Below are positions 2,636-51,980 of a stretch of DNA of 64,000 bases, one piece after another. Numbering within the stretch: the stretch's first letter is position 1; the number at the start of each line of letters is the position of its first letter. Made by a program: the position numbers and the translations under genes. The stretch lies in assembly GCA_023213395.1 (NCBI GenBank), contig CM041465.1:212977741-213041740 (forward strand). The letters run 5' to 3'. Source of the DNA: Cycas panzhihuaensis (Eukaryota > Plantae > Cycadophyta). The notes beneath the pieces were generated by a model. It was given only the letters and a program-made list of their open reading frames with translations. It had not been told where the DNA came from and did not search any database.

Positions 2636-3065
2636 TATAGGAAATAATATTCAAGGAGAACATGGTAGAACATAAAATAAACTTCAATAGATTAATACAT
2701 CAATATAAAAGTTTAATATATTAATGTTGCAATGTAGCATAAACCATGAAAGCATTGTATTCAAGCCATATTGTGAGAAGAAAACTTTACAAATTTCCTA
2801 ATAAGGGTGGTGTCTAAAGACACCAGGGTTGCACACCCCTTAATATTTATAATTTTGGGGGAGAAGGGAAACTCCTAAACCTTTAAAATTTAAATTAACA
2901 ATAAAATAATACTAACTTAAGTCAAATGAAACTAACTTAAATCAACATTAAACTTACCTTAACTTACCTATACATGTTGAGCACCCACATGTGTAAAATG
3001 AGTTTAATAAGGTGTACAATCCTGGTTGGAAGATGGGAGTGGATTGATGATGACTAACTCCAACA
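2636..3065 (-). repeat. 3' LTR of element A
   Basis: Aligns by eye with 7283-7722; abuts the PPT ttcttcccctta. Confidence 0.95.
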
Positions 3066-3588
3066 TTCTTCCCCTTAATGGTCATCATGAATACTTGTAT
3101 CTTCTCCTTGAACTTATGGAACTTATATTTGAAAAAACTTTAAAAATTTGATCTTTATCAACTTGTTTCAACCTTCTTGTAAAATATCTCTCTTTACCAA
3201 GGAGTGATGCAAAAAAACTGTAAGTAGATGAAACTTGATTCAAATGTAGATTAATAGCTGTAATTTTGACTTTGTCAACTAGAACATTGAGAAGGCTTTA
3301 AACTTAAACTTTGTCTTTTCTAGTCTTTATGCTATGAACAACTATCATATCATTAGGTTCATTCTTTGTCATATCATAGGATTCATTCTCCATAATGTCA
3401 TAAGATTCATTCTCCTCCTCAAATGGAGGATCAGGTACTTGTGTAGCAAGTTGGTCCTGCATTTGATCTAAATCTTCATGGGTGTTGTCATTATGATTCA
3501 CTTATTCTATTACCTATCTCGCATGCTCATCAAAACTATCATCAAATACATAGAGGGTATCTCCCCCATAAGTAGAAATCAATACATT

Positions 3589-3816
3589 TCAAACAGATTT
3601 AGAAGTTGTTAATTCAAAAACCTTTGAAAAAATATCATCATTCATAGTGTAAAATAATAAACCTAAGACTTCATTATCCTTTCTAAAATTTTCTTTAATA
3701 CTTAGATCACATTCATATTGTAAATGTTTTAGAAGATCATGTTTAATAAAATAATCTAGCCTAGTTTTGTACCATAGTGAAAAAATTTTCCTATTGAATA
3801 TAGGAAATTGTGCCAT
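3589..3816 (-). pseudogene. Truncated copia gag N-terminus (UBN2/Retrotran_gag_2-like)
   Basis: MAQFPIFNRKIFSLW...DNEVLGLLFYTMNDDIFSKVFELTTSKSV fits the copia gag N-terminal pattern; followed by acidic low-complexity ORF 3304-3501. Confidence 0.7.
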
Positions 3817-5871
3817 TTTATCAAAGAAACTTTAGTAAATAAAATGTATGCTTTTACCAAATCAAGGAGTCAATAAATGAATGAATATATATGATTTCAA
3901 ATAAACTTTTTAAAGGAGATATAATTCCCTTTGAAAATGAATGAACTAAATGCAACCTTTATGGGTGCAATAAGGAAATAAACTTTTCAATAATGATAAA
4001 TGCTTTCAATATATGTATGCCTTTAGAAAGTATATGAACTAAGCATAATAAGGAAATGATCCTTTCAATAATGGTAAAAATGGCTTTTCAATAAGTGTGC
4101 CTTTCAAATAAACTTTAAAATGAAATAAATATAAGAGCAAATTTGAATACAATAAAGATCCTTTTAGTAATACAAATCTGAAATGTAACTTTGATGATAA
4201 AAAGAATAATCCTTAACCTTTTGATTCTTCAAATAAATAAATATAAACTCTTAATGCAATAAATCCTTAGCCTTGATGATAATATATAATGCTAAAACTA
4301 AAATGTATATGTGTATTTTCACTTTGAAATAAAACGAATATGAAGAAATTTTGAATAAAAAAGGTATTGTACTTCTTAAAAGAAGGTTTAAAGGATAACC
4401 TCAAGTTTGGTAGCTTTAAAAGTATACTAACCGATGTTAGAATAATATGAAACTTCACCAATATGAATATTAATAAAATATCTATCCAATGGAACTGACC
4501 GTTTTAAAAACGGGTTCCTATAAGTCAAGTTTTGATAAAGCAATGCAGGCCTCTTTTTTAGGCTTAACAAGAGTTGGAAGCTTAAAAAGGTATAAAAATT
4601 CTAATAAAATACTTATAAAATGTTATAAGATGATCAAATATCATTTATAAGACTGCTTAATATATTTTTAGCTAAACATTTTTTAGAAATATATATAAAA
4701 AATATGTAAAAATGACAGATTAGAGGTAATTAAGTACCTCAAATTTAATCGATTTTAAAATCAGTAAAAGAACATGAAAACGTATAAAAACATATGTAAG
4801 TTTTAAGATAATTAAGTCAGTTTACCAACAAAACTAATAGGACTAAATTCTAATACAAAATAGAGAAGTTATAGTAGAAATGGCAATAGGTACCTTTATG
4901 GTAAAATGTTAAGAAAAACGCTGAAAACCACTAAAGTGGCACTTTTGACGATTAAAATAGTGATTAAAATGAATTCTAAAAAATAAAATAAAAGGTGGGT
5001 AATGAATTTTTTTGAACATAGATCATTGTAGAACATATTTAGATAAAAAATAATTACCCAGTAATAAAATATAATTAGTTCAAAAAGTGATTTTGTAAAA
5101 AGTTTTGAAAAGTCTCAAAAAATGACTAATTGACTTTAAATTGACTGAAATGGGGTCAAATCAGCACCAAATTGGTCACATGACCAATCAAAATCGATCT
5201 ACAAAAACTTTTTGATGCAATGAAATTGGTTTCATCAAAAACCTATAAGTCAGTGAGAAGTTATAGCAAAAATTTGCCAGTAACCCTTTGTAAAAGTGAA
5301 AAATTAAAAGAAATAAAAAGGAAAAAGGTGTTTATAAACTTTCGTTAGCCCCTTTAGTGATGAGTTAAGGTCATGTGAGGGTGTCTTATGATCAAGGGAT
5401 GAATTGTGAGGGGTTAATACTCTTTGAAACACAGATTCTAAAAAAATATTAAATTCAATTAAATTTGTTTGAACTTTATGGAAAAAATAAAATTTTAGTG
5501 ATTTTCAAGAGCACCGTGAGTATGTTACACCATCGCGCCCTGCACATGACCGTTGTTACAAACATGCATGCAGATCTACACAGAGATCACGCGGAGGGTG
5601 ATCTTGGGAGCCGTTGACGCGTCAAGGAGAATGCCACCCACCAGGGGGTCAAAACACGCCGAGTTTGTCAACTAAGCAACTGATGGTATCACGCGGAGGA
5701 GACGGAGATGGAAGTCCATGGAAGAGGATCACTCAGGAGAGGGAAAGACGAAGGTTTGTCATTGCTATAAGGGGGACTGTACCTAGTTAGGAGAGTCGTG
5801 ACTGCCTTGCTAAAGATGATGCGATTAAAGAGTAGAAGTGAAGAATGTTGTTACTGATATTCTTGGCTACT

Positions 5872-6020
5872 TTGGAGCTGTTTTTCAGGGATGTCCCAAG
5901 CTCTGATAGACAGAATTTACTTCTGTGAATCTTTTCTGCATCGTAGTTGACTTCATCGACCCTACCAAAAATGTGAGAGAGAATGATATTAAACAACAAA
6001 TGTTGCTCAATCTTGTGGAT
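5872..6020 (+). pseudogene. Captured fragment of PP2A B' (B56) regulatory subunit
   Basis: FFRDVPSSDRQNLLL [frameshift/deletion] NLFCIVVDFIDPTKNVRENDIKQQMLLNLVD matches the B56 N-terminal core FKDVP..EKQNLF..KLNLCCVVFDF.DPTK..KEK.IKRQTLLELVD. Confidence 0.85.
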
Positions 6021-6232
6021 CAGATTGAAGCTGCTATTGTGCTATTGTGAGGATCATGAAAGCAAGGCAGATTTGAGACCATAATAATATTGTGGCAGAG
6101 GTGACAAGACAGTTACAATCAAGGTTTCTGCCAAACCCTATTGTAATAAAGAAACGAATTGAATCTCTTATTGAACGAGAGTTTTTATAAAGGGATAAAA
6201 GTGACCAAAAATTATACAAGTATCTTGCCTAA
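6021..6232 (+). pseudogene. CUL3: Captured cullin-3 C-terminal (neddylation/WHB) fragment, followed by probable 3'UTR
   Basis: QIEAAIV[8-nt dup][58 protein letters not shown], the canonical CUL3 C-terminus. Confidence 0.95.
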
Positions 6233-7185
6233 GACACTACAGATTGTTTCAGTTGTTATCTAGTTAGATGTGTATGCAATGTGTAGAGCAAGGTTTCTTT
6301 GCTACAGTTTCTGGTATTGATCATCAACACTAAGGTTAGTCAGTCTTATCTTTGCCAAAGGTTTGCTTTGTTAAAATATGCTTTGTAGCGAAAGGAGAGG
6401 CGATTGAACTAGATTCTCAAGTTTGAAAAAAATGATAGAGCCACCCTTTATTCCAAGGGAGTATGTGAGCCCTCCTGATACCAAAGTGCATTTTAGATCC
6501 GTAATCATGGTAAAAGAGGTTACAACTGTCAACAACAATGAGTCAATGGATTTGTATAGGATTTGAAATTCTTTGATTTGTTATTTGTTTTGTCGTATAT
6601 ATGTGTAGCACCATGATTTTAACTCTGGACGATCTATTATTTATGTTTATTTTGAAAGCCTAGTGGTTTTATCCAATGCACAGATTTACTTGGAGTGCCA
6701 CGAGAGGTTGTCAAGTTTTCAGGGTTTCAAGGCTTCGATGGTGAGTGTTAAAAAGAAAAGGCTCGATTCCCAGCCCAATGATTTGAAAGGATTCTAAACC
6801 CTGCGTGTATACTTTAAGGAAATCTCCAATTAATCTTTTGTAGATTGGGTGCTCACATCACGTCTACGATTACATTTATTATTATTTGGTAATGGAATAA
6901 TGTGAGGAGATAAATATGAAAAGACGAAGATGCTCTGAACCTTTCAGAATCCACCTGACTTGCGAATCTCTAACTTAGGCTAGTTTGGAACTCATTAAAG
7001 ATGATATTAATTTGGTATATATATTTCCTAATATTTATCAATCCAGATATGAACTATTCAAAACCGTTCTTTTGCTTATGGAAAATCTATGTATCTGCTA
7101 CACTATTAGTATTTTCAGATCTTACAGTATTGATTTTATTTGAAGCATGACAACAAATAAAGAATGAAATAATGAAGCTAATGTA

Positions 7186-7280
7186 GCTTTGATACCAAAT
7201 GTTAGAAAATAATGGAGCCCGAAGTAGCTTTGATACCAAATAAAGGAAATAAAATGGAGCTAAACTATGCTCTGATACCA
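7186..7280 (-). repeat. Three tandem tRNA-iMet PBS copies (41-42 bp period)
   Basis: gctttgatacca 7186-7197, gctttgatacca 7227-7238, gctctgatacca 7269-7280; each is followed by aat and an LTR-end-like A-rich stretch. Confidence 0.9.
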
Positions 7281-7282
7281 AA

Positions 7283-7722
7283 TGTAGGAAATAATATTCA
7301 AGGAGAATAAGGCAAAACATAAAATAAACTTTAATAGATCAATACATCAATATAAAAGTTTAATATGTCAATGTTGCAATGTAGCATAAACCATGAAAGC
7401 ATTATATTTAAGCCATATTGTGAGAAGAAAACTTTACAAATTTCCCAATAAGGGTAGTGTCTAAAGACACCAGGGTTGCACACCCCTTAATATTTATAAT
7501 TTTGGGGGAGGAGGGAAAATCCTCAACCCCTAAAATTTAAATTGACAATAAAATAATACTAACTTAACTCAAATGAAACTAACTCAAATTAACTTAAATC
7601 AATATTAAACTTACCTTAACTTACCTACACATGTTGAGCACCCATATGTATAAAATGAGGTTGATGAGGTGTACAATCCTGGGTGGAAGGTGAGAGTGGA
7701 GTGATGATGATTAACTCCAACA
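7283..7722 (-). repeat. 5' LTR of element A
   Basis: tgtagg...ctccaaca, adjacent to the PBS. Confidence 0.95.

Positions 7723-9195: not shown

Positions 9196-9196
<1 letters not shown>

Positions 9197-9235
<39 letters not shown>
9197..9235. repeat. (TA)n microsatellite
   Basis: Seen directly. Confidence 0.95.
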
Positions 9236-16400: not shown

Positions 16401-17099
16401 TCCTAGGTTGATGGGATTGACTACAATGAAACCTTTGCACCTATCACTCAAATGAATATAATTAAAATCATTATATCTTTAGTAGTCAAGTTTGGCTAGG
16501 AAATTTATCAAACAGACATAAATAGTAACTTTATAAATGGAAACTTGGTTGGAGAGATCTATATTACTTAATCACCTATTTTTATTTTTTATCCTAACTT
16601 AGTTCCTTATGAAAATAGGTACAGGCATAATGTCACAGGATCACAAAGACAGAAAAAATATAGGAAAAATACATTGTATAAGTACACATAATTTGCTAGG
16701 TGGAAAACCCCTTCTGGGGAAGAAAAACCACCTCCTAATCTAAAATTTTATTAAGAGTAAAAGCTATACATAAAACCATAAGTAAACCACCTACATATGA
16801 TAAAACCAGCCTTTAAAAAAGGCTCTGGATAACCTCCTAGATTCTCAGAACCACCTCCTTGAATCTAGGAGAAGATATTAATAACAAGAAAGGTTCGTTG
16901 AAATGGGCAGTTGTGCATTTCAACGACCTTTCACATAATGATTAAATAAAGGCTAAACTTTAAATATTAGAATCACTTAAATATAAATTTACACATGTGA
17001 CTTAAATAAAACATAATAATAGCATAAAGGTAACATTAATAATCCTAACATCCCTCTTTAATGTTAACTTTTATAATATAGAAAAAGAAGGTCTTCATC

Positions 17100-20000
17100 A
17101 CATTAATCTCCCTTTGATGGAGACTTCTTTTATTTTTAACAAATCTCATAGGTTTAGAAACTTGACTTCAGTTAAAAACTTTGTGAGTATGTTAGCAACC
17201 TATAGATCTGTAGGACAATAAGACAAATAAACAATGTTATCAGTAACAAGATTACGAATAAAATACTGATGTAATTCTATATGTTTAGTTCTAGAATGTG
17301 CTACTAGATTTGTAGCAATAGTAATGGCACATTGATTATCAACTTTAAGTTCAATGGAAGAGTTAGAAGACAGACCAATTTTATTTAGAAGAGATTTAAG
17401 CCAAAGTGCTTCTTTGCTGGCTTCAACAAGTGCACGATATTCAGCTTCAGTCATTGATAGAGCTAGTGCCTGCATTTTCTTACTAGACCAAGTAATAGGT
17501 GAATAATCCATAAAAAATACATAACTTGATGTAGAGATCATTTGTATCACCTACCCAATCAAAATTAGTATATCCTATTAAAGTTAAAGGTTTACTATAA
17601 AAATTATAAGTTAGTCCATAAAAAATAGTGTTTTGAAGATATCGTAATATACGTTTAGCAGCTTTCCAATGTGATTCATGTGGTTGTTGCATATAACGTG
17701 AACATAAAGTGATAGCATGTGATATATCAGGGTGGGTATGAGTTAGATAAATAAGACTACTAATTAGTTATCTATATAATATTAGATCACATAAAGGTGT
17801 GGAACAATCAGTAGATAGTTTTACTCCTAATTGTAACGGATTAGAGACAGGTTTAGCATTTTCCATGTTAAACCGTTGAATTAAGTATAAAATATATTTA
17901 GGTTGAGATATAGTTATTTTTTAATCATGTTGATAAATTTGTAATCCAAGAAAATAATGTAGAATGCCTAAATCGGTCATTTCAAATTTATTCATTAAAG
18001 TAGATTTTAAATGATGAATGTTATTAGTTGATGATCTAGTGATTATAATATCATCAATATACATGATTAAAATAGTAATATTTTTATTTTCACATTTGAA
18101 ATAAAGATTTGGATCACTAATACATCTAGTATATCTAATTTTAATTAGATAATCGTCAACTTTAGTATACCAAGCTTGAGGAGTTTGTTTTAATCCATAA
18201 ATTGATTTCTTTAGTTTACAAACTAAATTAGGATTACCAATAAAGCTAGGTCACTATGACATGTAGATCTCTTCTTTGAGATCACCATTCAGAAATGCAC
18301 TCTTTACATCCATTTGATGGATTTCCTAACCAAACTTGGTTGTGAGAGCAATAATTATTTTAATTGTATTCATTTTTGCAACAGGGGCAAAGGTTTCGTT
18401 ATAATCTATGCCATCAATTTGAGAAAATCTTTTTGCAACTAGGCTAGCTTTATATTTTTCAACTGCGCATGTTAAGTTGTATTTTGTTCTATAAACCCAT
18501 TTACAGTCAACTACATTTTTCTGAAGTAGGAGTGGTATAAGATCCCAAGTTAAATTTTTAATTAGAGCATCAAATTCAACTTGCATAGCTTCCTACCATA
18601 CAGGATTATTGCTAGCTTGTTTAAAGGTTTTAGGATCATTATTGTCCATTATTTTAGCCATTAAGACATAGTTAGTATATAATTTTTGGGCAAGTGTTCG
18701 CCTGGTATCTGAAGGATTACCTACATCAGATCCAGTGTCAATAAGTATTTTCTTTGCCCATACAAGCTATTTGTTGATAATTATTTTTGTAGTTATAGGT
18801 TGAGTTGAGGAGCTAGCTTGAAAAGAAGAGTCTATTTCAGTAGGTTCAGATAGAGTCCAATTCTAGACTTGAGTAGATAAGGATTCTATGATTTCAAGGT
18901 CAACTTATTTATCGAAGGGGTTAACCAAATTGGTGTTGGTTAACAAATTTTCAACCGGAAGTTCTACATAGGTAGAGGTTGAAGAAGATCCTTCTTCATC
19001 AAATATTACATCACGTAAAATTAAAATTTGATGTGTGACTGAATCCAAAAGTCTATAAGCTTTACTTTCTTCGTTGTATCCAACGAAGATATATTTTTGA
19101 CTCTTAGGATCTAGTTTCTTATATTTTTCTTTGGAAACGTATCCCCACATAATACTTCCAAAGATTCGTAAATGATTGACTAAAGGTTTTCTTCCAGACC
19201 ATTTTTGTTCTGGAGTAACATTTTATAGGCATTTACTAGGTAGATGATTTAGAATATAGTTGGAGCAGTTAATTGCTTCAACCCACAACTTTAGGTCAAG
19301 GTTCTTTGTATGTAACATGTAATGAGTCATCTTAACAAGAGTGTAGTTTTTGCATTCAGCAACATCGTTTTATTGAGGAGTGTATACAACAGAATACTGA
19401 AGATGAATTTCGTACTTTTTATAAAAGGAAGTGAATTTACCACTTAAGTATTCCTTGGCATTATCAGATCTAAAAATTTTAATTTTTGAGTTTGATTAGT
19501 TTTCAACAGGCGTTTTGAATTCAACGAAAATATCAAACACTTAACTACATGTTTTGAGTGTGTAAACCCAACATTTTATTAAAAAATTATCAATAAATGT
19601 GACAAAATAATGAGAGCTAGAATATGATGTTACATGAAAAGGTCCACATATGTCAGAGTGAACAAGTTCAAGTGGAACTTTCACTTTGAATTGAGTTTTA
19701 TATGGAAATAGGTCCATGTGTTGCTTACCTATTACACAGGCTTCGCAGACACCATAAATAGTATTTTAAGGATGGAAGACCATGAACCATGTCATGTCTT
19801 TTTAGATATTAAAATTTTCTATAACTAGTATGACCAAATCGTGCATGCTAAAGTTTACTAACTGAGTCAGATTTGGCAATAAAGGCACTGAAAGATTTTG
19901 TTTTGTTATTTTCTAGACTTGTTAAACTATAGAGACCTATGCTATGTTCAACAGGTCCTAAGGCAATATGTTTAAATTTGTTTGATGGCTCTTTAATGAT

Positions 20001-21309
20001 AAATTTAACTTTCCAGAATTTGACAACAAGATCTTTTTGGCAGATTTGATAAATAGAAAGTAGGTTTGGTACTAAACTAGGTACGTAAAAGATGTCATTT
20101 ATTGAACCATCTTTTAAGGTAACATCACTTGATCCTTTTACTTTAAGTTAGGTTCCACTTCCAAAATAAATCTCTTCTTTAGAGTTAGTTTCTGATTAAT
20201 AAGTGGATAAGTTTTTCTCGTATCCTATCATGTGATGGGATGCACCATAGTCAAGGATCCCTTATGCTAGTTGATTAGTTAGGGTAACAAATGCAAAAGT
20301 TATTGCCGTTAGAGAACGATTATGAGTTTGTCGATTTTTTGGTCAGGATTGAGGTCAGTTTTGCAATCCCTTGGAAGCTTTCCATGCTTTCGAAGCTATT
20401 CTACTTCTACAGAAATAAATAGTGTGGCCTCTTTTATGACAATAGGCACAACTAGTGTTCTGAGAAGGATTTACATTGTTCCAATTAGAAAATGACTGAT
20501 TAGAAGTATTCTGATGTTTAGATGGACCAAAATACTTAATATTATTTTGAGAGTTAGGTGGTGAACCTCTATGAGGTTTCTAAAATTTTGGATTACTATT
20601 AAAATTGTTCAGATGTTTACTTTTATTTTGTGGCTTAGTTTTAGAAAACAAAGCCTAGGAAGTATCTTTCAATATGCCTTTTTGAATTAACATCGTTTGA
20701 TGTTCTATCAATTGGTTTGTCAATTGATTGAATGTTATAGGAGGATTGCTAGCTTGTTGTCTAGCAGTTTTAAAAAAATTAAAATGTTCTGAAAATTTAT
20801 TTATTGCAAGACATACGAGTATCGTCATCTTTAGCATGCATGATTTTTTATTCAGTATCACCTACTTTGGTTTTGGATTTAATACAGCTACCTAGGTCTT
20901 TATTAATTAGTTAAATTTTACATCAAAAATCCTCAACTTTAGAAAAATCGTCATAAGTGAGGTCATACAATTATTGTTCTAAGATAGCCAATTGATTTAT
21001 ATCGACCTTATCATATTTTTCCTACAGAGTGTTCCAAATAGTGGCAAGATCGTCTGTTTCAGAAAACTACCGACTGATTTCTGGTGAAAGTGAGTTCAGG
21101 ATAGTGCCTAGGGCTAAATCTAAGTTCATCAGATATACCATATAACTATCTGAAGTTGCATTAGTTAGTTTTTTAAATTCACCTATCACATATCGCCATA
21201 TCTTTTACTGTTTAAGCTGATGGGATATGCGATTCATCCAATCAGCATAATTTAAGCTTGTTAAAACTAGAATTGGAACGCAGGTGGTTGTTCCTGGCAT
21301 TAAATCCAT
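17100..21309 (-). pseudogene. Copia gag-pol of element B (stops and frameshifts)
   Basis: KLDPKSQKYIFVGY (INT C-terminus), KWVYRTK...GIDYNETFAPVA (RT), WKAAKRILRYL, EAEY..HSRTKHIE (RNase H). Confidence 0.92.
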
Positions 21310-21422
21310 ATTGGAAATTGAGTTTGTTTGAAGATTGAAAGATATAAGAGTAGGTGCAAAGAAATAATCACTAAGTAAGGTTACCAAACATTAGATTAAT
21401 ATTTTATAGTTATGATTAAAGA

Positions 21423-36700: not shown

Positions 36701-39700
36701 TTTCTATGTTCCTCCAAAATATGAGCATAATAAGTAGAGCTAAAAATTTTAAACTCAAAGATACAGGGGATTTATCCATACTACATTTCATGTGGAGAGG
36801 GGCCAAGCTTGGAGGGACTAATAGTATTGATGTAATACACGGTAATCTAGATAACCTCAGCCTAAAGATAGATAGAGACGTTCTTATATACCAGCATAGC
36901 ATGAGCCATGTTCATGATGGTCCTGTTCATATGCTCAGCAACTCCTTTTTTCTAGGGTGTACCTACAATAGTAGTCTAATGTTTGATTCCATGTTGACAT
37001 AGTTACGATTTAAACTCATTAGATGTGTACTCACCACCATAGTCAGTCTTGAGTATTTTGATCTTAAATCCAAATTCATTTTCCACACGGGCCTTGAAAG
37101 CTTAAAACATAGAAAAAGCTTCATCCTTCTTTGCAAGAAAAGCAATCCATATTTTCTTGGTAAAATCATCAATGAAAGAAATATAGTGCCACTTCTGTTT
37201 AAGAGAAGGGATGGGCATAGGATCTCATATATCTTAGTGTACAAGTTGCAAAGGTTGGCTAGATTTCTACTAACTATGAGGAAATAGTTGTCTATGAGAT
37301 TTGGAAATGATACATGCTTCGTATTTGAATGGCTTAGAGGAGAGCCTAGGCATACTAGGAAGAGTGACATGCAGTTATCTTAAATGATCAATTTTTATAT
37401 GGCCCGTATGAGCATGCCATAGGGTCACTTGGGACAACTTTTAAGGAGTTAGGGTTATGGTAAAAGCAGAGTCATTATTAACATAGTTAGCTTCAGAGGA
37501 TGGTAAGCCAGTTAGTCGAAAAAGTTTGCCATCAAGAATTTCGGTCATAACCATAGTATTTGAAGGAGGGTAAATGACACAGAGAGTTTGATTATTTGTA
37601 GTTACAGTCAGATCAAATCCACCAGATACAAGGGTGGATAGTAAGAGCATGTTCTATTTCAGAGCAAAAATATATAAAACATCAATAAAGGTAAAATCTA
37701 GAAGGCCTAGTAGTTTTAGGCAAATAGTTCTAAGTACTTCGACTAGCTGAGATGATTTGTTAGCCATGTGTACAACACCATGAACTTCAGCATCAAAATC
37801 CTAAAAGAACTGGTAATGACAAGTCATATATTATGTTGCTCCAATATCCATAATCCAAGATGAAGTATTTGAGGTAGTATTATTTGCAACTCCAAGTGGT
37901 GAAGGAAAAAGTAAATAAGCATAGCCATAATGAGTCTCAATATACTTAGTGGATCTATCAATAATATTTGATAAATTGGTCTCAATTCTTTGAAGGTGTG
38001 CATGAGAAAATTGCATTCCACCAAAACCATCTTCAAAAGAAGTATTATCAACATTATGTACACCATGGCACTATTGATAGCTTGGTAGTTTATTAGTGAC
38101 AAATCTACAATTTTTGGTATAATATCATTTTCTATTACACCTTTGGCACATAATTGTTTAATTTCTAGTCCTATAAGAAGTATTTAGCTAGTTGGATTAT
38201 CTCTAATTACTAGATCTAGGTCTAGGTTGATTATTTTGGCCTTGGAGTTGAGACTTTTTTTGTTAGAGTTAAGGACCCTATTGACCAAGAGGACATTGTC
38301 CTTGTTGTCTACCTCTTCCTCTTCCATAGGAATTATCACCTCTGTGAGAGTATTGACCTTGATTTTTGGTATAGTAAAGATCTTCTTCTACTTTAAAAGT
38401 AGCATCAACTGGATTTGATATAGTGGCAAAGTTAATATCAAAGGTCTTATTAAATTTAATGAATTTCTCAGCAAGAGCCCCAAAGTCTAGGGTCTTTAAG
38501 ATGCCACTAGATTAAAGACTTCCTAATAGATTTTTGTAATCTGGGATATGGAGACATGATTGAATCAACAAAGCCCATGTAATATATTAATTTTCAAAAT
38601 CTTTATCAATGGCTTGCTTAATTGGACAAAGGAGATTGATTATCTCACTTATGTATCCTTTCTATATTTTCAATTTGTTCATCTTCAACACTAAGCGAAC
38701 AAATTCTAAGTCTGATTTGGTGTCAAAGTTCTTCTTAAGAACTTTAAGAACTTTCCATGTCATATTATGTACAGCTTCATCAATGAGATTATGTAGGGAA
38801 TAATCAATGATAAGAAGTATTCCTCCACAGATTTTATCATCATCAAGTTCCCATTGGCATTTAGCTACAGCTTCAGTAGGAGTAGTCGGAGCACCTCCTT
38901 CAAAAGCACTTGAGGTAGTTGTAGCTGCAACAAATGGTGTAGGTTGTAAGTGATCTCTCCAAAGACCTTCATACTTTGTAGTATTTCTGACACCAGTGAA
39001 CTACATGTCCTAATTTTTCTTTTCTTTTTAGAATATAGTTTATATTTTGCTTGAACTGTGAAGACATGGTATCTTTTGAGAAGGGAAGAAATGAACAAGG
39101 GACTATAAAAGTGATGGTAATAAATGATCAATCACTATTTACAAAATAGGAGATGTAATAAAGTAGTGTAGCAAAAAGAAGAATAAGTGAGAATGGTTGT
39201 TCAAAAATGAAGGGAGCAACTTAGAGAAAAGTCACCAATATTTATGATAAATATTAACCTGACATAACAGTAATATGAGAAGCACTATGATGAAAATTAG
39301 CCACTAACACTTGGGGTAAATATTAATTTAATGCAGTAGGAATATAAGAAGCACTATGATTATGATTACACTATGGATCACTTTTTACAAATAAGTATGA
39401 TTAATATACAAGATTGTAGGCTAATATGGAAGCTGACATCATTGGGTGTACATAACTTGAAACTCAAATGTAGGATGCATAATCAACCCAATAACCTCTA
39501 ACTTGTGTCCAACATATAGTTGAGGTTGTTGAAGGGATGCCTAGGCTTCTAGTAGAATTAAATTGGCCTTCACCCATTATACCCATAATTATGCTTGGTG
39601 ATGAAATCCAAGTCACAACGGAGCCTAAGTACTCCCAATCCTTACCTAGTTCACCAATAAGCAGCTATATACCTCTTCTAAAGAGTGGTATGTGCATACC

Positions 39701-41404
39701 CATGGCTATGATAGATATTGAATTAGGTATATTTTAATCTTGTATTAAAGTTTCAGTTTTCCTAGTTAGTTATCAAGATGATCCTAATTGAGGCATGATG
39801 ATATAGCTAACTAAACCTCACCAATATTCTTGTTCAGTCTAGTCCCAACTTGAAACCCACACCTCCTTTATGGCATGGTACTCTACCAACTAAGGTATTT
39901 CAATCTTGGTGAGTGTGTGAACAGGTACAAGATGGCATAAAATAGTGTACATAATGCATTCCTTTTAATAAGAGTAAGAAGATTATCGAATTACATCAAA
40001 CGTACATTTAACTGAAAATAGAATACTTACTTGGAGTGATTTTGGAGTGCATGTTTAGAGAGTCTTTAGAGTGCTTGCTTAAAGTGATTTTGGAGTGATG
40101 AAATATAATGCTAATAAGTGAGTGAGGACACCAGATATTGCTTTGTTCTAGGTGTTTTTTTACTTACTTTTATAATGGGCTTTAAACCTTATAAAAAGAA
40201 GGAAGAAAATTTCTTCACATTTTTTTTAAAATATTAAAAGAAAAAGTAGTCTTCAATAAATTGACAATAACTTTCTCCCACGATAACGAAATGGAGTGCC
40301 AATTTTTGTGCTGCAAAATAGATTAGAGCTTCATCTTTAAGAAGTGGAATCAAGTTCAAATGAATTATAGAAAATGTTTAGCAATCCCTCAAAGTTAAGA
40401 GAATATATTTTTCTAGAATTCTTACTAAAAATAACTATTGTTCACTAAAACAATAATAGCTTTCTCATACGACATCAAAACTAGGTGTTGATTTTTGTGT
40501 TGGAAAGTAGACATAGAGACTCATCTTTGATAATTAGAATCAGGTCAATTAGAGCTCTTTAGAAGATTTGTAGATTTGTAAAGTTTAGCAAATAAATTTT
40601 ATTTCTATAGAAATTTTAGCTTACTAATATCTCATTAACACATGATACCATATGAAATTTCCATCATTTTTTTCTCACTAGGGTCCCAATATGAGAAAGG
40701 TGAGAGCATACAATGATGTATATTTTAAATGGATCTAAATTCTTTAAAAAAATTGGGTAAAACCTCCCCTTATAATCATTATTCTAAAAACTAGAAAATT
40801 TTCAACAACGTTTTTCCTTGTTAAAAGGGGAAAAAAAATGGGAAAGAAAAGAAAAATGAGATAGCATAAATGACCACCAATGATTGAAATCCTTGGGCCT
40901 TATAACTCCTTGTATTGTGCTTCCAAACCTACAAAAGAGAATGAGAAAGTAAACAATGCAAAATATGCTATGATAATAACTTGAAAATATTTCTAAATCC
41001 ACTTTCACAATCTCCTTCACCACATGGATTGTGGGGGGAGAAAGAAGTGATGGCTTCATTACAAGTGTAAGTGAGAAATATAAAGGAATAAAGCTCTAAT
41101 ACCACATGAAAATAGTGGATCTATCCTTTATTTCCATGCACTAAACACAAAGGTAAACATTGGAGCAAGAGAGACTTGAGAGAAAGAGAGAAGCTCTCAC
41201 AAAATGGGGAGGTAAGAATAAGCCTCCTCCATTGATCTTTTACTTTTATATTGAGAGAGGGAGCATTAGAGTTAGGTGAAATGAAATTACACATAATGCA
41301 CATGAAAGTGCATTTCACTTAAGTGATCTAATTTAAAGTTCACTTAAGACCCTTTTTAGAAATAATCAACTAATGTAATGACTTTGTGACATTAAACCTT
41401 TTCA
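33772..41404 (-). mobile_element. Element C: full-length decayed Ty1/copia nested in the integrase of the + strand copia
   Basis: 298-bp LTRs 33772-34069 and 41107-41404; TSD AACTA/GACTA (one transition); PBS gctctaatacca 41093-41104; PPT 34070-34080. Confidence 0.95.
34500..39068 (-). pseudogene. Copia gag-pol of element C
   Basis: WIMDIGAT (protease), LYSLKQAPRAW and LLIFVDDMLI (RT), SGYITFFGATPISWRS, DQVVDIFTKPL (RH). Confidence 0.92.
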
Positions 41405-46400: not shown

Positions 46401-49344
46401 GGGAAATGATTATAACAAATAATTGTATTCATTAGTTATAAGGTCATGACCTTCATTAAGATTGATATAAATACACATTAATCCCATGAATATTATTAAT
46501 TAATTAGTTTCTTTAAATTAGTGTCATAGCCTATTTCTTGTCCAAAAAGAATATTACACTTGCTTGAAGAAAAATTAGGATGATTTTCCATTATTTCTTC
46601 ATCTATCTATTCATTCTTATTTTTGTTCTCATTCTTCTTATTTCAATTGTTATCATCAACTTCCACTTCCTTATTATTTTCTTGACACCTTTTCATTATT
46701 GTTATCTCTATTCAATAGTTTCATTATTAAAATAACTCATTTAATTCCCTTTCTATTTTTAATCTATAGATTTCTTAAAAGAATTTTTATTGGCATTTCC
46801 TAATTAGCCTATTATTCTATCTTACTTTGTTATATTATTCCTTTTCATCTTTTATTATTATTATAATTATTTAATGTGGTCCATTGATTCTATTTATCTT
46901 CTTGTATGCATACATGTGGTCTTTTATGGAAGTGCATCCTTTAATAATAACTTGCTTAAATATTACATTTTATCAGCCTCACTATTGTCTTTCTCTATAG
47001 CATTAGCTTAGCATGCCAAATTATGTGTTGATCACCATTTGTGTCTATCCACCTTACTTACAACACGTCCATGCCCTAATCTACCTCTTTAATGCTCATT
47101 ATTTGTAGAACAACTACTCTTACTTACTCATCTTTGTTATAATAAAATATATAAACACTCACTATGCTTCATTCATTTTCTTATAACTATCATTGTAGTA
47201 TTGTTATGTATAGATAATTATTATAACAACCACATTATTGCCTCATCTTGGCATCTAGTAATACATCACAATTATAACTTGCATTGACTTGGTTATAATA
47301 ATTATTCATCCTCCCTTTTCTAGAAACTACATTTATTGTCTTATATCTACATCCATTAAGACATCATAATTATAGCTTATGTTATCCCAACTATAAAACA
47401 AGTTTATTCTATAATTTGTAACTCAACTATGCATTACCATCTTGATCTTGTTATATGTTATATGAATACATACTATTACATACTAGTTGAACCTTTAATA
47501 TTTTCTTATTCCTTAAGTTGGGGATTAGTAAGATTAAAGGAATAAAATCATTTAATTATCATTTGATTAAGGTTATATTAATTATCTACATGAGTAAGCA
47601 TTAAGTCCTATTTGCATTAAGATAAGCTGAACCTCATATGACTATATTCCATTTATAAGTATTCCTTAATACCTTTGAAAAAGAAGCAGAAAAAAATTTA
47701 TCTAGTTCATTCCTAAGGCAGCTATAATAAAGTAGTAAAAGAGCCATGCCAATAATTTTTATGATCATGATGAAAAGAGAAAATGGTAATATCATAAGAA
47801 GAAAAATTAAAAGAAATGTTAGTTAAGCTTGACCAATCAATTACCATGCTTGAAGTAATAGAAAGTAAAGTTTAAAATTAGGGAAGTTTTTAAAGTAAAT
47901 CTTTAATGAAATGAAAGATGCACATACTCAATAAATAAGAACTAAATCATCAACATGTCTCATTTAATATTAAATGTGTACATATATAACTCATGGTTCA
48001 AGGTTGTTAGAGATTGTTATATAACCACCTATCAACCTAACCATATAACTACTCACCAAATACTCTTTAAAAAAAAATCATAATGACCCCTATTAAACAT
48101 ATGACCCTTAAATTAAACTTTATATTCCAACATCCCCATATAATATTTAGTTTCTTATAATTAAAAATTGTACCAAATATAATCTATATTCTCTTGACAC
48201 TTTGCCATCAAACTATGTTACTCAGTATGCTTATACGCATGTTTCATCCTAAAAAGGTTGTTGGCATCCATATAAAGATATCACCATCCACCAGATCACA
48301 TAGGTGACTAGCCTTTATGTCTATAAGTTATCTAGATAATGTCTTCACATACATGATTCATGAACACTAAATAGATCTTTGTTTGGGTTACATTTCAACC
48401 CCTTCAACTACATAATTCATTGGTGTATATCTTAGGAGTAAGTTGAACTACCTGACTAGACAGATATTGTAAAGCTTGACATTCAAGAACAAGTTGTATT
48501 ACTTAACAAGCAATGTCTAGCAACCTATATCAATCTTGCATTTTATTATAAAAGATTCTCAACATCCACATTTGAATAAAAACTTGGTCACAAACATCAA
48601 GTGAAGGAAGTTGCATTCATGCCAACTTCCACCCATAACGAATATGAAGAGGGTAAATTCCTTAAGCCTCCAAACTCATTAATATTTATTCATTCATATC
48701 ATCATTAGCTCTTTGGTTGAAAAAAATCATCATACTATCATTAATAACTCCTTTGACCAAAACACATCATCAATGACTTCTTTAAGCTACAAAGCACACA
48801 TACAATAGTAATCAATTACTGCCTATTTACTATAGAGCTTTACATTTAAATCGTAACACAACTTCCATGACTAAATATAAAATATAAGGGTCTAAAGCTT
48901 CATAATTGGTTACTTTATTGTAACAACTTCACTTGTCTACCTTTAATTTTTAATTTAGTACCAATTTTTACTTCAATAAATAGGGTCATATTTTATGAAT
49001 CACATTATTTATCACTAGATGATACACATGCAAGAAGAAACTAATGAATAATTAAGTTAGAAAAAACCAATGAAACATAGATAACAACTTCATTATATTC
49101 TAAAAAATATTGCTTGCTTTTAAGCTAAGAGTCATTGAGCACTTGAGTATTAAATTCAACCTTTTTAAAGCTTTTTTTTTTTCTTTCTTAACCCCTTAAT
49201 GGGTTTGATTTCAACCTCTCTTTCCTTCACTATTGTTGAGGGTTTTCACTGCATTCTACTAATCCTCTTCAATTGTAAGTAGTTCTCAAAGAATATTAGG
49301 CTTATCCCATAATTTATAGTTACAAGATTATTTCTTATTTTTAT

Positions 49345-49931
49345 TCAATACTATAAATAAAATTCATAGCCTCACTTACAAGTCATATAACAACACCCAA
49401 ATTCCTTTTCAATCATAAGTTTACATCTTGTACAATATTGTCATTTGCTTTTCTTTAGCGAGATTGAAGAAGATCAAATCATCTCCCCCTTTCTTGGCAT
49501 GAGATAATTTCTAAAAATTGAAGCAATCTAGACCCACATGACATGGCACATTGCATTGGACATAAAATAGTCTTTTACACAACAAGTACTCTTAATGGGT
49601 GTCCCACTCAAGCATCTTGCTTCTTGTCCTCCTTGCAATAGGAGTGTAGAATAGTTTAAGAAAGGATAATAGAACCTTTCAAACTTAGGTATATCAACTT
49701 TAACTAGTTCCATAAACTATTCCACATATGTTTCAAAGCAGAGAATCATTATACATTAGTTAGGTGCCAAATATACCCCATAATCAAACTTTGGGCATTG
49801 TATGAGAACCACTTTCTGCCACCTCGTAGTAAAGATATATTGGACTACAAAATTAGAATAAAATTTATAGGGACATGCCATATTATCTAATATTTTAGAT
49901 GGGCATTTTGCTTCTAAATAGATTCCACATA
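49345..49931 (-). pseudogene. Captured RBR (RING1-IBR-RING2) E3 ubiquitin ligase fragment, RSL1-like
   Basis: LCGIYLEAK..MACPYKFYSNFVVQYI..IQCPKFDY (RING1); IPKFERFYYPFLNYSTLL..FYVQCNVPCHVGLDC (IBR); LAKEK..*QYCTRCKLMIEKEFGCCYMTCK*GYEF (RING2). Many Cys are decayed TGT>TAT. Confidence 0.88.
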
Positions 49932-50330
49932 ACTATTACATCTTGAGCAGTGGAAGTAATGAGTATAGTACTTCACTTTGACTATCACTCTATTTATAAC
50001 TACATCCTTTATGTGTGGCAATCATAATCATGGGGTCTATCCACCACTAATCTATTTAGTTAGTGAATTGGCAGGATCGTAGACATCTTTAAGCTCTGGT
50101 AGATGTGGTGCATGAGGAATGATTCCAGGATTCCTAGCAAAGGTAAGCAACAATGCTACTATCATCTAAAATGTAAATATAATTACCACCACTAGAATTG
50201 CATAATCGCTATCATATCTAGAGAACTTATGCAAAAGATTCCTAGTAGTAAGTATATAAAATATTATTATGGGAACCATAATTAAGAATATTATGGCAAC
50301 TAAAGATTGAATATTAGGTCCAAAGATGAT
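49922..50330 (-). pseudogene. Captured DHHC protein S-acyltransferase (PAT) N-terminal fragment
   Basis: IIFGPNIQSLVAIIFLIMVPIIIF...YAILVVVIIFTF*...LLLTFARNPGIIP...LPHIKDVVINRVIVKVKYY..HCSRCNSYVE matches plant PAT (RLIFGPD...TSARDPGI.P...PRTKEV.VNG..VKVKYC...HCSICNNCVE). No introns. Confidence 0.9.
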
Positions 50331-50589
50331 ATCCGATGTAGCTAAATCTTGGCCTTCATTAGAGAAATGAATAAAGGCAATATAATTTAATGACTTATAT
50401 TAGCTAGAATGGTTTATTCATGTAATGCTAAAGCCTCTATAAAAAGTTGTTCTAGATTTTGATAATTATGCAAAATAACTATAATGATGAAATGATTGAG
50501 AGGTGTTAGATGACTAAAATAAGAAAAGTCTATCAACTTTATATCTGTGGCTATAATGTTTTCTATAAAAACATCATCGTTACTTTTGT

Positions 50590-51385
50590 CTTTAGGCATG
50601 GTGGAGAGTATCTCTAAAATCATCTTTTTAAATTCCATACAAGTAGTCATTAAAGAGGGAAGAAGCTCAATGAATTGAATGACAACACTAATACTCCTAA
50701 TTAGACTCACGTGCTTACAAGAATAAATGACTCTCAATAGGCTCAACCTGGTAACCATTACCCTTGGATACCTCCTCTCCTTCATCAATTTTAATAAGCT
50801 AAACAAGAGCCTTAAGTTAGAGATGCTCTCAAACTTGGGCTTCTGGTTCTCTATGTTAAACATCCCTTCAATGAGACTTAAAGAGCTTATCTTTGTGTCT
50901 ATGATGCCCTCGTGTAGGAGGCCCATCATAAGTAACATCTTGGCTAATTGGGTCAATGTCCTCTTATACTCTAAATCTAATGGTAGTTGTACCAAGATCC
51001 CAATGGCCTCGACGCTGACCCCATACAATGTGAAGGGGCCTAGGAGGGACAATAGCAATGTAATCCCTCCTTCTTCCACCACCACCTTCTTTGTATATTT
51101 CTCAGTCCACATCAACCCATGGAGTGTAGAGAGTGTCTATATTCTACTTTGGTGCTTGGCCTTAGGCAGCTTCTTTAGAAGGAACTTAACCCTAGTCCTC
51201 ATATCACTTACTTATATGTTCTATAGGGAAGAATCTTTATGAATACTAATTGGATATGAAGTAACAAAGGGTGGAATTGGGCATTAGCGACATGTCTTAG
51301 ATCTCCTACATTGTTATACGAAATATGTAATGCTTGGTTGTGAACCACTTTTACTATGAGAGAATATAATTTGGATTCCTAGGTT
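50590..51385 (-). pseudogene. Captured plant U-box/ARM E3 ligase fragment, PUB30/PUB31-like
   Basis: KKLPKAKHQSRI...KKVVVEEGGITLLLSLLGPFTLYGVSVEAIGILVQL...AKMLLMMGLLHEGIIDTKI...IELLPSL matches the PUB30/31 ARM region. The U-box itself is mostly missing. Confidence 0.88.
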
Positions 51386-51980
51386 TGAGATATGCCATCT
51401 TGAGAAGGACGAGAATGGCAACCTCTCAACCTACGTTCTGATACCAAATGAAGGATGTGCATACTTGATAAATAAGAACCAAATAATCAACATATCTCAT
51501 TAAGTATCAAATGTGTATATATATAACTCATGGTTCAAGGTTGTTAGAGATTATTACATAACTGCTTAACCACCTAACTACTCACTAAATACTTTTTAAT
51601 TAAAAATCATAATGACACCCATTAAACATATGACCCTTGAATTAAACATTATATTCTAACATAAATATTAAAATTAAAAAAAAAAGGAAAAAAAGAAATA
51701 AAACAAAATCATGGATGATAAGGAGAGAACCAAGCCACTTAAAAAGGATTACCATATATTGCTACTAAAATTAAATAAATTAATGAGTTATCAAGGCAAT
51801 ATCAAAAGAAGATTAGATGGGTAAGACACAATGATAGGCAAAATCTTACGGGTATATTTTTTTGATGAGTTATTTACAAGAAAAGGGAAAGGTAATTCCA
51901 TCATATTACGATAGTTTTTTGGTTTAAATTCTAACATATATTTTTGTAGATAGTTATACAAGTAGGATTGTAATTGTTAT

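What the first reader, a model, noticed from the sequence alone, without database searches (positions are those of the whole stretch)
2636..51661. Three unrelated LTR elements each carry host mRNA mosaics in the leader behind the PBS: a candidate polarised gene-capture system
Seen: elements A, B and D have unrelated LTRs, yet each holds intron-less host coding fragments in the segment following the tRNA-iMet PBS (A: PP2A-B', CUL3; B: APC1; D: PUB30/31, PAT, RBR). In A and B the cargo is antisense to the element, in the order PBS - cargo - AT-rich spacer - gag. Established: template switching during minus-strand synthesis gives sense cargo (as in D); plus-strand strong-stop DNA ends in the PBS and must jump. 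Inference: if plus-strand strong-stop DNA jumps onto a co-packaged mRNA, RT writes antisense cargo right after the PBS, and repeated rounds build an ordered array of host fragments. Such elements would transcribe antisense RNA or siRNA against host genes, or borrow homology that dampens their own silencing.
Basis: partly seen in the sequence, partly recalled or inferred. Interest (0 to 1): 0.9.

Follow-up and report, generated by a model that had tools for sequence, protein, structure and literature searches.

The report
Retrotransposons carrying stolen host gene pieces
Three old, unrelated copia-type retrotransposons in this AT-rich, probably gymnosperm, plant genome each carry decayed pieces of host genes between their primer-binding site and gag; this kind of gene-fragment capture is already known, and the proposed one-directional capture mechanism could not be tested here.

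Summary
The observation mostly holds. Four LTR elements (A-D) lie on the minus strand, each with a tRNA-iMet-type PBS at the inner edge of the 5' LTR. Their LTRs share no similarity.

Confirmed host fragments between PBS and gag:
- A: PP2A-B56 and the CUL3 C-terminus, antisense to the element.
- B: APC1, antisense, about 600 nt, internally permuted.
- D: a PUB ARM region, in sense.

PAT and RBR in D could not be verified. Element C has a 2-kb leader with no detectable cargo.

In a Pfam scan of long stop-free pieces, non-TE domains appeared only in these leaders and in one real gene. The APC1 piece runs uninterrupted across two intron positions inferred from other plants. No poly(A) tail or target-site duplication flanks the cargo in A or B. 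Capture from RNA during reverse transcription is therefore the best reading.

This is the known process of LTR-mediated retroposition, or gene-fragment capture. It has been documented in maize, animals and, in 2026, gymnosperms. Maize Sirevirus cargo shows no orientation bias.

The specific plus-strand strong-stop model remains untested:
- 29-300 nt of unassigned sequence separates the PBS from the first recognised fragment.
- D holds sense cargo in the same slot.

The finding is of moderate interest.

The parts
2636..3065 (-). Element A, 3' LTR. TSD ATATC at 2631-2635 and 7723-7727. PPT AAGGGGAAGAA at 3066-3076.
3300..3816 (-). Element A, gag-like N-terminal remnant, the only element-coding part left. 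Identified by eye; Pfam was blank.
3817..5400 (.). Element A, AT-rich spacer (GC 0.25) with no recognisable coding.
5401..5869 (+). Element A, CpG-retaining unassigned segment (CpG o/e 0.84). Possibly the 5' UTR and variable N-terminus of the B56 mRNA.
   Evidence: the assignment is inferred
5870..6020 (+). Element A cargo: start of the PP2A B56 core, antisense to the element.
   Evidence: PF01603, E 5.8e-5, profile positions 20-55 of 413
6021..6232 (+). Element A cargo: last ~70 codons of CUL3 plus the native stop codon (6230-6232). Joined in frame to B56; an 8-nt tandem duplication (CTATTGTG) later shifted the frame.
6233..7169 (+). Element A, unassigned PBS-proximal segment. Possibly the CUL3 3' UTR or further fragments; there is no poly(A).
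7170..7294 (-). Element A, three tandem ~41-nt units of [U5 end + PBS + 17 nt]. The exact PBS TGGTATCAGAGC is at 7269-7280.
7283..7722 (-). Element A, 5' LTR.
16608..17050 (-). Element B, 3' LTR. TSD AGGAA (minus-strand reading) at 16603-16607 and 24455-24459. PPT at 17051-17059.
17060..21307 (-). Element B, degenerate Ty1/copia gag-pol. Pol_BBD, then integrase SH3, then RVT_2.
21308..22650 (.). Element B, AT-rich spacer with no CpG and degenerate internal repeats.
22651..23066 (.). Element B, CpG-retaining unassigned segment (CpG o/e 1.03).
23067..23243 (+). Element B, weak DUF846/TVP23-like fragment, followed by a T11 run at 23256-23266.
   Evidence: E 0.004, below the Pfam cut-off
23278..23877 (+). 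Element B cargo: APC1 fragment, antisense to the element and internally permuted. 23278-23436 corresponds to aa 917-969 and 23416-23877 to aa 771-920 of a 1819-aa APC1.
23878..24012 (-). Element B, 123 nt of unassigned sequence plus the PBS AGGTATCAAAGC (24001-24012).
24013..24454 (-). Element B, 5' LTR.
33771..41404 (-). Element C, used as an internal control. Copia-like, PBS at 41093-41104, 2-kb leader (39067-41092) with no detectable host fragment. Nested inside an older plus-strand copia.
47909..48132 (-). Element D, 3' LTR. A PPT-like TATATGGGGA lies just upstream.
49172..49182 (-). Element D, A11 run in element sense. Possibly a poly(A) remnant of the last sense fragment.
49531..50399 (-). 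Not verified by any tool.
   Evidence: all blank
50417..51136 (-). Element D cargo: plant U-box ARM-repeat fragment in sense orientation. It forms a 240-codon open frame.
51435..51661 (-). Element D, PBS TGGTATCAGAAC (51435-51446) and the 5' LTR.

Best explanation
A, B and D are old, inactive Ty1/copia-type LTR retrotransposon copies: one full-length (B) and two internally deleted (A, D). Their cDNA picked up pieces of co-packaged, spliced host mRNAs through template switching by reverse transcriptase. This is the known process of LTR-mediated retroposition, also called gene-fragment transduction.

Sense cargo (D) fits the classical minus-strand switch onto mRNA. Antisense cargo (A, B) needs either plus-strand synthesis switching onto an RNA template, or minus-strand synthesis switching onto a host first-strand cDNA.

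The leader position is explained at least as well by tolerance as by a PBS-specific mechanism. An insert there spares the PBS, PPT and gag-pol. Antisense orientation also avoids premature polyadenylation when the fragment carries a 3' end.

Nothing here shows a present function. The fragments are riddled with stops and deamination changes.

Shown: element anatomy, cargo identity and orientation, lack of poly(A) and TSD, and confinement of cargo to the leaders. Inferred: the RNA intermediate, the switching steps and the timing.
For: - LTR pairs, TSDs, PBS and PPT are in place. B shows the copia domain order.
- Host fragments are confirmed: B56 and Cullin, specifically CUL3, APC1 and ARM_PUB.
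- The APC1 cargo is continuous across '...RLNEV|RR...' and '...DLQQ|...'. At those points, ORFs called on short contigs (presumably genomic, 1-8 kb) of several plants lose homology, which indicates introns there.
- Two unrelated coding sequences abut at 6020|6021.
- The internal APC1 junction lies in a shared S..WP microhomology.
- No direct repeat of 8 nt or more (A; 7 nt or more for B), and no poly(A), flanks the cargo. No long inverted repeats were found.
- Non-TE Pfam domains occur only in the leaders of A, B and D.
- Cargo keeps CpGs while the LTRs of A, C and D have none. The cargo therefore entered late in the lineage's methylated history, consistent with capture in or near the cycle that made each copy.
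- Literature: PMC5131818 (chimeric, partial, multi-gene retrocopies inside LTR elements, with microsimilarity at the junctions); PMC2773423; PMC3726574; PMC13477047 (gymnosperms, including W. mirabilis); bioRxiv 10.1101/777037 (no orientation bias in maize Sirevirus cargo).
Against: - No parent gene from this genome could be fetched. Breakpoints, microhomology at the element-cargo junctions and the true intron positions are therefore untested.
- B keeps a complete gag-pol, so its cargo was added rather than substituted. In the Drosophila cases of PMC5131818 the cargo replaced ORF sequence.
- Many unchecked first-reader notes from the same genome report mostly antisense, PBS-adjacent cargo. If that holds, simple tolerance would not explain the bias.
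Confidence: 0.6

Rival explanations
1. Plus-strand strong-stop DNA, whose 3' end is the PBS copy, transfers onto a co-packaged host mRNA instead of onto minus-strand DNA. It is extended on that RNA, sometimes hops to a second mRNA, runs off at an mRNA 5' end, and returns to the element. The result is antisense cargo anchored behind the PBS. Repeated rounds would stack new pieces PBS-proximally.
For: - A and B have antisense cargo in the first 1-2 kb after the PBS.
- In A, the order read from the PBS is CUL3 3' part, then the start of the B56 core, then a CpG-rich segment that could be the B56 5' end. That is the order an RT would produce moving 3' to 5' along two mRNAs and running off at a cap.
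- No poly(A) or TSD flanks the cargo.
- 32 unchecked notes in the same genome describe antisense post-PBS cargo.
- A review states that transduced fragments are usually in sense (PMC7264820), so a bias toward antisense would be unusual.
Against: - Recognised cargo does not abut the PBS: the gaps are 29 nt after a triplicated PBS unit (A), 123 nt (B) and ~300 nt (D).
- D carries sense cargo in the same slot, so position alone does not require this mechanism.
- In B the PBS-distal piece is a weak match to the middle of a DUF846 domain, not to an mRNA 5' end.
- CpG retention does not fall with distance from the PBS.
- This window offers only three elements.
- Maize Sirevirus cargo shows no orientation bias (bioRxiv 10.1101/777037).
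- No paper describing such a transfer was found.
Confidence: 0.2
2. DNA-level insertion. Free host cDNA, or a LINE-made and sometimes chimeric retrocopy, was inserted into the leader of a genomic or extrachromosomal element copy. The route would be end joining or target-primed reverse transcription, in either orientation. Only insertions in the tolerant leader survived.
For: - A '5' part of one mRNA joined to the 3' part of another' chimera, as in A, is also what LINE RT template switching produces (own knowledge).
- Both orientations occur in this window.
- Capture of spliced cDNA at double-strand breaks is documented (PMC4516963).
Against: - No poly(A) tail lies at the 3' end of the plus-strand cargo in A or B, and no flanking direct repeats were found.
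- Independent random insertion into three of four neighbouring elements, always in the leader, is improbable.
- Non-TE fragments are absent from the inter-element DNA that was scanned.
Confidence: 0.12
3. The cargo blocks are remnants of a gene-fragment-carrying DNA transposon (Helitron, Pack-MULE or CACTA) nested in the leaders.
For: Such elements commonly carry multi-gene mosaics in plants (PMC2773423).
Against: - No terminal inverted repeats are present: only one unrelated inverted pair exists in the whole window.
- No TSD flanks the cargo.
- The APC1 fragment lacks introns that DNA-level capture would usually keep.
- No transposase or Rep domains were seen in the Pfam scans.
Confidence: 0.03

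Closest known systems
LTR-mediated retroposition: chimeric retrocopies inside LTR retrotransposons (Tan et al. 2016, PMC5131818; yeast Ty1 chimeras cited there)
   Same: Both show partial, processed host mRNA pieces inside an element that keeps both LTRs. Both include multi-gene chimeras (B56-CUL3). One junction that could be read lies in microhomology. Poly(A) and TSD around the cargo are absent. The products can behave as non-autonomous 'pseudo-LTR' elements.
   Different: In the published cases the cargo replaces ORF sequence, and the model invokes only minus-strand switching. Here two of three cargos are antisense, all sit between the PBS and gag, and B retains its whole gag-pol.
Maize Bs1 and plant LTR-retrotransposon gene-fragment capture (PMC2773423, PMC3726574; Sirevirus capture in bioRxiv 10.1101/777037; gymnosperm survey PMC13477047)
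   Same: These are plant Ty1/copia or LTR elements holding fragments of several unlinked host genes. Capture is reported as common in large TE-rich genomes, including gymnosperms. The siRNA cross-talk and 'camouflage' ideas have already been proposed there.
   Different: Those surveys do not report position relative to the PBS. Maize Sirevirus cargo shows no orientation bias and prefers 3' exons. Function and expression were not examined here.
Retroviral oncogene transduction
   Same: Spliced host sequence is incorporated into a retroelement genome through aberrant reverse transcription of co-packaged RNA.
   Different: Retroviral transduction starts from read-through transcripts and gives sense, expressed cargo. 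Here A and B are antisense and all cargo is fragmentary and decayed.
Non-autonomous LTR elements (TRIM / LARD)
   Same: D, and largely A, have LTRs, a PBS and a PPT but no pol, so they would need trans-mobilisation.
   Different: D is 3.75 kb, well above typical TRIM size, and its interior is largely host-derived or unassigned rather than a conserved family core.

Membership tests
Ty1/copia LTR retrotransposon | Pair of direct LTRs ending TG...CA, flanked by a 5-bp target-site duplication | tested here: met
   A has TSD ATATC and B has AGGAA, both exact. C matches 4 of 5 positions. D has no clean TSD..
Ty1/copia LTR retrotransposon | PBS complementary to the tRNA-iMet 3' end next to the 5' LTR, and a PPT next to the 3' LTR | tested here: met
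   Matches to TGGTATCAGAGC: 12/12 (A), 10/12 (B), 11/12 (C), 11/12 (D). Each lies 0-2 nt from the LTR edge in the correct orientation. Purine tracts precede all four 3' LTRs.. The tRNA identity rests on my own knowledge of the plant iMet 3' end.
Ty1/copia LTR retrotransposon | Domain order gag - protease - integrase - RT (RVT_2) - RNase H | tested here: met
   In B, Pol_BBD, then SH3_retrovirus, then RVT_2 lie along the minus strand. A has only a gag-like remnant seen by eye. D has no TE domain.
LTR-mediated retroposition / transduced LTR element (Bs1-like) | Host-gene-derived sequence inside the element, between intact LTRs | tested here: met
LTR-mediated retroposition / transduced LTR element (Bs1-like) | Cargo is processed, meaning introns are absent | tested here: inconclusive
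   The APC1 piece is continuous across two intron sites. The sites are inferred from ORFs on short contigs (presumably genomic) of other plants. The parent locus of this genome was not available. B56, CUL3 and PUB were not testable.
LTR-mediated retroposition / transduced LTR element (Bs1-like) | Microsimilarity at the switch points | tested here: inconclusive
   Only the internal APC1-APC1 junction could be read; it lies in a shared S..WP motif. The element-cargo junctions need the parent mRNA sequences.
LTR-mediated retroposition / transduced LTR element (Bs1-like) | Cargo-bearing element retrotransposes again, giving several copies with the same cargo | not testable with these tools
APC1 and CUL3 cargo are noted only in this window among the 795 windows scanned, which is less than about 1% of a multi-gigabase genome.
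LINE-mediated processed pseudogene | 3' poly(A) tail and flanking target-site duplication | tested here: not met
   No A-run lies at the 3' end of the plus-strand cargo in A or B. No flanking repeats of 8 nt or more (A; 7 nt or more for B) were found. Decay could hide short ones.
Pack-MULE / Helitron cargo carrier | Terminal inverted repeats or Helitron termini around the cargo, with introns usually retained | tested here: not met
   There are no inverted repeats around the cargo, and the APC1 fragment lacks the inferred introns. Helitron ends were not searched for specifically.
   A and B are antisense but D is sense. Unassigned gaps of 29-300 nt follow the PBS. There is no age gradient in CpG content. 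Testing this needs parent sequences and family copies.

The most novel reading that the evidence does not exclude
In this probably gymnosperm genome, copia reverse transcription may recurrently mis-transfer plus-strand strong-stop DNA, or early plus-strand DNA, onto co-packaged host mRNAs. Many unrelated families would then acquire antisense, PBS-anchored arrays of spliced host fragments. This would be a directional capture process that has not been described, and it could feed antisense RNA or siRNA against donor genes, or blunt silencing of the carrier. The CpG-retaining islands inside otherwise CpG-free elements would fit reduced methylation of the cargo.
Probability: 0.15. Interest if true: 0.75.

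Novelty: new member of a known kind. Interest (0 to 1): 0.4.

Why it matters
Gene-fragment capture by LTR retrotransposons reshuffles exons, seeds pseudogenes and can tie host genes into TE silencing. It was recently reported to be very common in gymnosperm giga-genomes (PMC13477047). What remains open is the mechanism and whether it has a direction.

This window supplies clean, dissectable examples:
- antisense spliced cargo behind the PBS in two unrelated copia families;
- a two-gene in-frame chimera;
- a permuted fragment with a microhomology junction.

If a genome-wide census confirmed an antisense, PBS-anchored bias, it would point to an undescribed error mode of plus-strand transfer. It would also make the 'TE camouflage / antisense weapon' ideas directly testable. 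If the census shows no bias, these are ordinary template-switch products kept where an insert does least harm.

Tried and rejected
- As a result, no parent genes, family copies, RNA reads or sRNA reads could be obtained.

Blank searches.
- The search for homologous proteins on the APC1 piece and on the PUB piece returned nothing. Its length window and exact-word seeding do not suit decayed fragments.
- The ESM Atlas gave no usable hit for the true APC1 fragment.
- PDB searches were blank for the APC1 piece, both 'RBR' pieces, the 'PAT' piece, the B56 piece and an unassigned A piece.
- There were no tRNA genes and no Rfam families in the window.
- Sensitive blastn did not find LTRs for the older plus-strand copia into which C inserted.
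- A lenient tblastn found no further APC1 pieces in B's leader.

Readings rejected.
- Back-spliced circRNA as the template for the permuted APC1 fragment. The junction lies inside a microhomology, about 10 codons downstream of the inferred exon start (ALDKCRE...), and not at an exon boundary.
- LINE-type insertion and a DNA-transposon carrier, for the reasons given under the rival explanations.
- Selection on the 240-codon PUB frame in D. About 6% of such fragments would stay open by chance at this LTR divergence (my estimate), so the frame is not significant.
- A 9-nt repeat near the ends of D's cargo. It is about what chance gives, and it is in the wrong order for a TSD.

Full report
WHAT IS THERE

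The window is AT-rich (GC about 0.31) and strongly depleted in CpG (o/e 0.30) and CHG (about 0.5). The best match of the APC1 fragment is a Taxus chinensis protein. The genome is therefore probably a gymnosperm with heavy methylation-driven decay. The species was not identified.

Self-comparison finds four LTR pairs. Reading the termini shows that all four elements lie on the minus strand.
- Element A, 2636-7722. LTRs are 92.6% identical. TSD is ATATC and the PPT is AAGGGGAAGAA. An exact 12-nt tRNA-iMet-type PBS lies at 7269-7280. This PBS is part of a ~41-nt unit (U5 end + PBS + 17 nt) repeated three times in tandem.
- Element B, 16608-24454. LTRs are 93.5% identical and the TSD is AGGAA. B is a full but stop-riddled Ty1/copia: Pol_BBD, then integrase SH3, then RVT_2.
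- Element C, 33771-41404. LTRs are 94% identical. C sits inside an older plus-strand copia.
- Element D, 47909-51661. LTRs are 87% identical. It has no TE domain and no clean TSD.

The pattern search for the PBS gave 7 hits against 3 expected by chance. The four that matter each sit 0-2 nt from the inner edge of a 5' LTR, in the correct orientation. The four LTR families show no similarity to each other even with sensitive settings. 'Unrelated LTRs' is therefore correct.

CARGO

Element A, plus strand, antisense to the element.
- 5870-6020 is the start of the PP2A B56 core (Pfam E 5.8e-5, profile positions 20-55).
- 6021-6232 is the last ~70 codons of a cullin, including its native stop codon (Cullin_Nedd8, E 5.7e-13).
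- A PDB sequence search identifies this cullin as CUL3: E 3e-13 against Cullin-3, residues 719-754 of 768, versus 4e-5 against Cullin-1.
- The two coding sequences meet at 6020|6021 and were originally in frame (...LLNLVD|QIEAAIVRIMKAR...). An 8-nt tandem duplication later shifted the frame.
- Upstream, 5401-5869 is a CpG-retaining segment that could be the B56 5' region.
- Downstream, 6233-7169 is unassigned.

Element B, plus strand, again antisense.
- The 116-aa piece had no Pfam, PDB, Atlas or word-seeded hit.
- A full HMMER scan of 1.84 billion representatives returned APC1 proteins, best E 3.6e-27. Pfam confirmed these as APC1.
- By tblastn, 23416-23877 corresponds to aa 771-920 and 23278-23436 to aa 917-969 of a 1819-aa APC1, in the same reading frame. 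The ~600-nt fragment is therefore internally permuted.
- A weak DUF846-like piece (E 0.004) and a CpG-retaining segment lie further from the PBS.

Element D, minus strand, in sense.
- 50417-51136 is a plant U-box ARM region (E 6.6e-14) forming a 240-codon open frame.
The 'PAT' stretch does look like a plant DHHC acyltransferase to my eye, but that is recollection, not a test.

Element C.
- Its 2-kb leader has no detectable host fragment.

IS IT MORE THAN CHANCE?

I scanned stop-free pieces with Pfam. The thresholds were 40 aa or more inside the four leaders and 55 aa or more in all inter-element DNA.
- Leaders gave B56, DUF846 (weak) and ARM_PUB.
- Everything else gave only TE domains (RVT_2, SH3, gag, Pol_BBD, integrase), noise above E 0.003, and one real GT34 glycosyltransferase gene at 55045-57198.

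Recognisable host-gene debris in this window is therefore confined to the PBS-to-gag segments of three elements.

RNA OR DNA ORIGIN?

- Several short APC1 hits are ORFs called on 1-8 kb Logan, ENA or NCBI contigs. They lose homology exactly after '...RLNEV', and one loses it after '...DLQQ'. They begin at 'ALDKCRE'. This is the pattern expected when an ORF runs from an exon into an intron.
- The cargo reads straight through both positions ('RLTEVKQLL...'). It therefore lacks two introns that are conserved in several plants. This is an inference, because the parent locus of this genome could not be fetched.
- In A, two unrelated coding sequences are fused at one point.
- No A-run marks the 3' end of the plus-strand cargo in A or B. 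No direct repeat of 8 nt or more (A; 7 nt or more for B) flanks the cargo blocks, and no inverted repeats flank them.
- LINE-type retrocopies and DNA-transposon carriers are therefore unlikely.

THE PERMUTED APC1 PIECE

I confirm the permutation. I also confirm that both ends of the fragment fall at the same APC1 site (GRG, aa 917-919; 6-nt repeat ATGGGG). However, the internal junction lies within a microhomology shared by the two joined positions (...ISELKSWP / ...ESPPSDWP). It sits about ten codons inside the inferred exon, not at an exon boundary. A back-splice junction is therefore not supported. Copy-choice between two APC1 templates at a microhomology fits better. The coincidence of entry and exit points remains unexplained.

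AGE SIGNAL

- The LTRs of A, C and D contain no CpG at all.
- A's gag remnant has a CpG o/e of 0.06.
- A's cargo has 0.33-0.84, with an island at 5401-5860.
- B has an island at 22651-23066 with o/e 1.03.
- LTR differences are mostly transitions.

The cargo has thus spent less time under methylation decay than the element backbone, or has been less methylated. The simplest reading is capture in or shortly before the cycle that produced each copy. The CpG level does not fall with distance from the PBS. It therefore gives no support to 'newest piece nearest the PBS'.

MECHANISM

The best-supported reading is capture of spliced host RNA by template switching during reverse transcription.
- D's sense cargo fits the classical minus-strand switch.
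- Antisense cargo cannot arise that way. It needs plus-strand synthesis copying an RNA, or minus-strand synthesis copying a host first-strand cDNA.

It is physically plausible and explains one feature well: read from the PBS, A shows the CUL3 3' part, then the B56 5' part, then a possible mRNA 5' end.

Several points weaken the specific model:
- Recognised cargo begins 29 nt (A, after the triplicated PBS unit), 123 nt (B) or about 300 nt (D) beyond the PBS.
- D has sense cargo in the same slot.
- The PBS-distal piece in B is not an mRNA 5' end.
- Leader position is also what survivorship predicts, since inserts there spare the PBS, PPT and gag-pol.
- Antisense orientation is favoured when a fragment carries a polyadenylation signal, as the CUL3 3' end would.

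With two antisense elements and one sense element, no bias can be claimed from this window.

COMPARISON WITH WHAT IS KNOWN

- LTR elements carrying host gene fragments are long known: Bs1, and 20 cases in 22 Mb of maize (PMC2773423); rice and sorghum (PMC3726574).
- LTR-mediated retroposition is described with partial, multi-gene chimeras, junction microsimilarity and re-mobilisable 'pseudo-LTR' products (PMC5131818).
- A 2026 survey reports very frequent exon capture by TEs, including Copia and Gypsy, across gymnosperms including W. mirabilis, with a preference for first and second exons (PMC13477047).
- The siRNA cross-talk and camouflage ideas are already in PMC2773423 and in Muyle et al. 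(bioRxiv 10.1101/777037). The latter also found no orientation bias for maize Sirevirus cargo, so antisense copia cargo is not new in itself.
- A review states that transduced fragments are usually in sense (PMC7264820).
- In five literature searches I found no paper describing position relative to the PBS or a plus-strand strong-stop capture route. That part would be new if true.

THE WIDER SCAN

This scan noted similar cases before on other DNA of the same genome. 32 first-reader notes hold both 'antisense' and 'PBS', and at least one describes a sense mosaic (s1-829122). These are unchecked AI notes from the same kind of reader. I treat them as a lead only. APC1 and CUL3 cargo are noted nowhere else among the 795 windows scanned. 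That is uninformative for low-copy families.

LIMITS

I could not obtain parent genes, other family copies, or expression or small-RNA data.

VERDICT

The objects are new members of a known kind: copia-type elements with retroposed host gene fragments. The polarised strong-stop mechanism is an interesting, untested sub-hypothesis. I give it about 0.15-0.2.

Noticed in passing
window 23278-23877: The APC1 cargo is internally permuted ([aa 917-969][aa 771-920]). Both outer ends fall at the same APC1 site (GRG, 6-nt repeat ATGGGG). The inner junction lies in a shared S..WP microhomology, not at the inferred exon boundary. This argues against a back-spliced circRNA template, but the matching entry and exit points remain unexplained.
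   Followed up: yes
window 7170-7294: A ~41-nt unit occurs three times in tandem. It comprises the last 11 nt of U5, a TT spacer, the 12-nt PBS and 17 nt downstream. Only the LTR-proximal PBS copy is exact.
   Followed up: partly
window 5401-5860 and 22651-23066: Two CpG-retaining islands (o/e 0.84 and 1.03) lie inside elements whose LTRs have no or very few CpGs. Both sit at the gag-proximal end of the cargo. Either these pieces were acquired late or they have escaped methylation.
   Followed up: partly
whole window: GC is 0.31, CpG o/e is 0.30 and CAG/CTG o/e is about 0.5. Transitions dominate the LTR differences. The closest APC1 relative is from Taxus chinensis. This looks like a heavily deaminated gymnosperm genome; the species was not identified.
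   Followed up: partly
window 55045-57198 (minus strand): The only apparently genuine gene in the window is a GT34-family glycosyltransferase. It is split into two ORFs (270 aa and 165 aa) and lies in a CpG-normal region (54.3-58.5 kb).
   Followed up: partly
window 31901-33144 and 41649-43144 (plus strand): An older plus-strand copia carries gag and Pol_BBD on the left and SH3_retrovirus and RVT_2 on the right. It is split by the insertion of element C. Its LTRs were not found.
   Followed up: partly
window 50417-51136 (minus strand): A 240-codon open frame covers the PUB ARM fragment in the otherwise decayed element D, and a 171-codon frame lies on the opposite strand. By a rough estimate, about 6% of fragments would stay open at this divergence, so this is not evidence of selection.
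   Followed up: partly
window 62866-63255 (minus strand): Another copia gag fragment (Retrotran_gag_2, E 7e-4) lies near the window end. Its leader would run off the window.
   Followed up: no
proteins P0064, P0065: Capsicum annuum has separate short 'APC1-like' annotated proteins (172 aa and 367 aa) covering the same APC1 region. These may be captured or duplicated fragments in another TE-rich genome.
   Followed up: no
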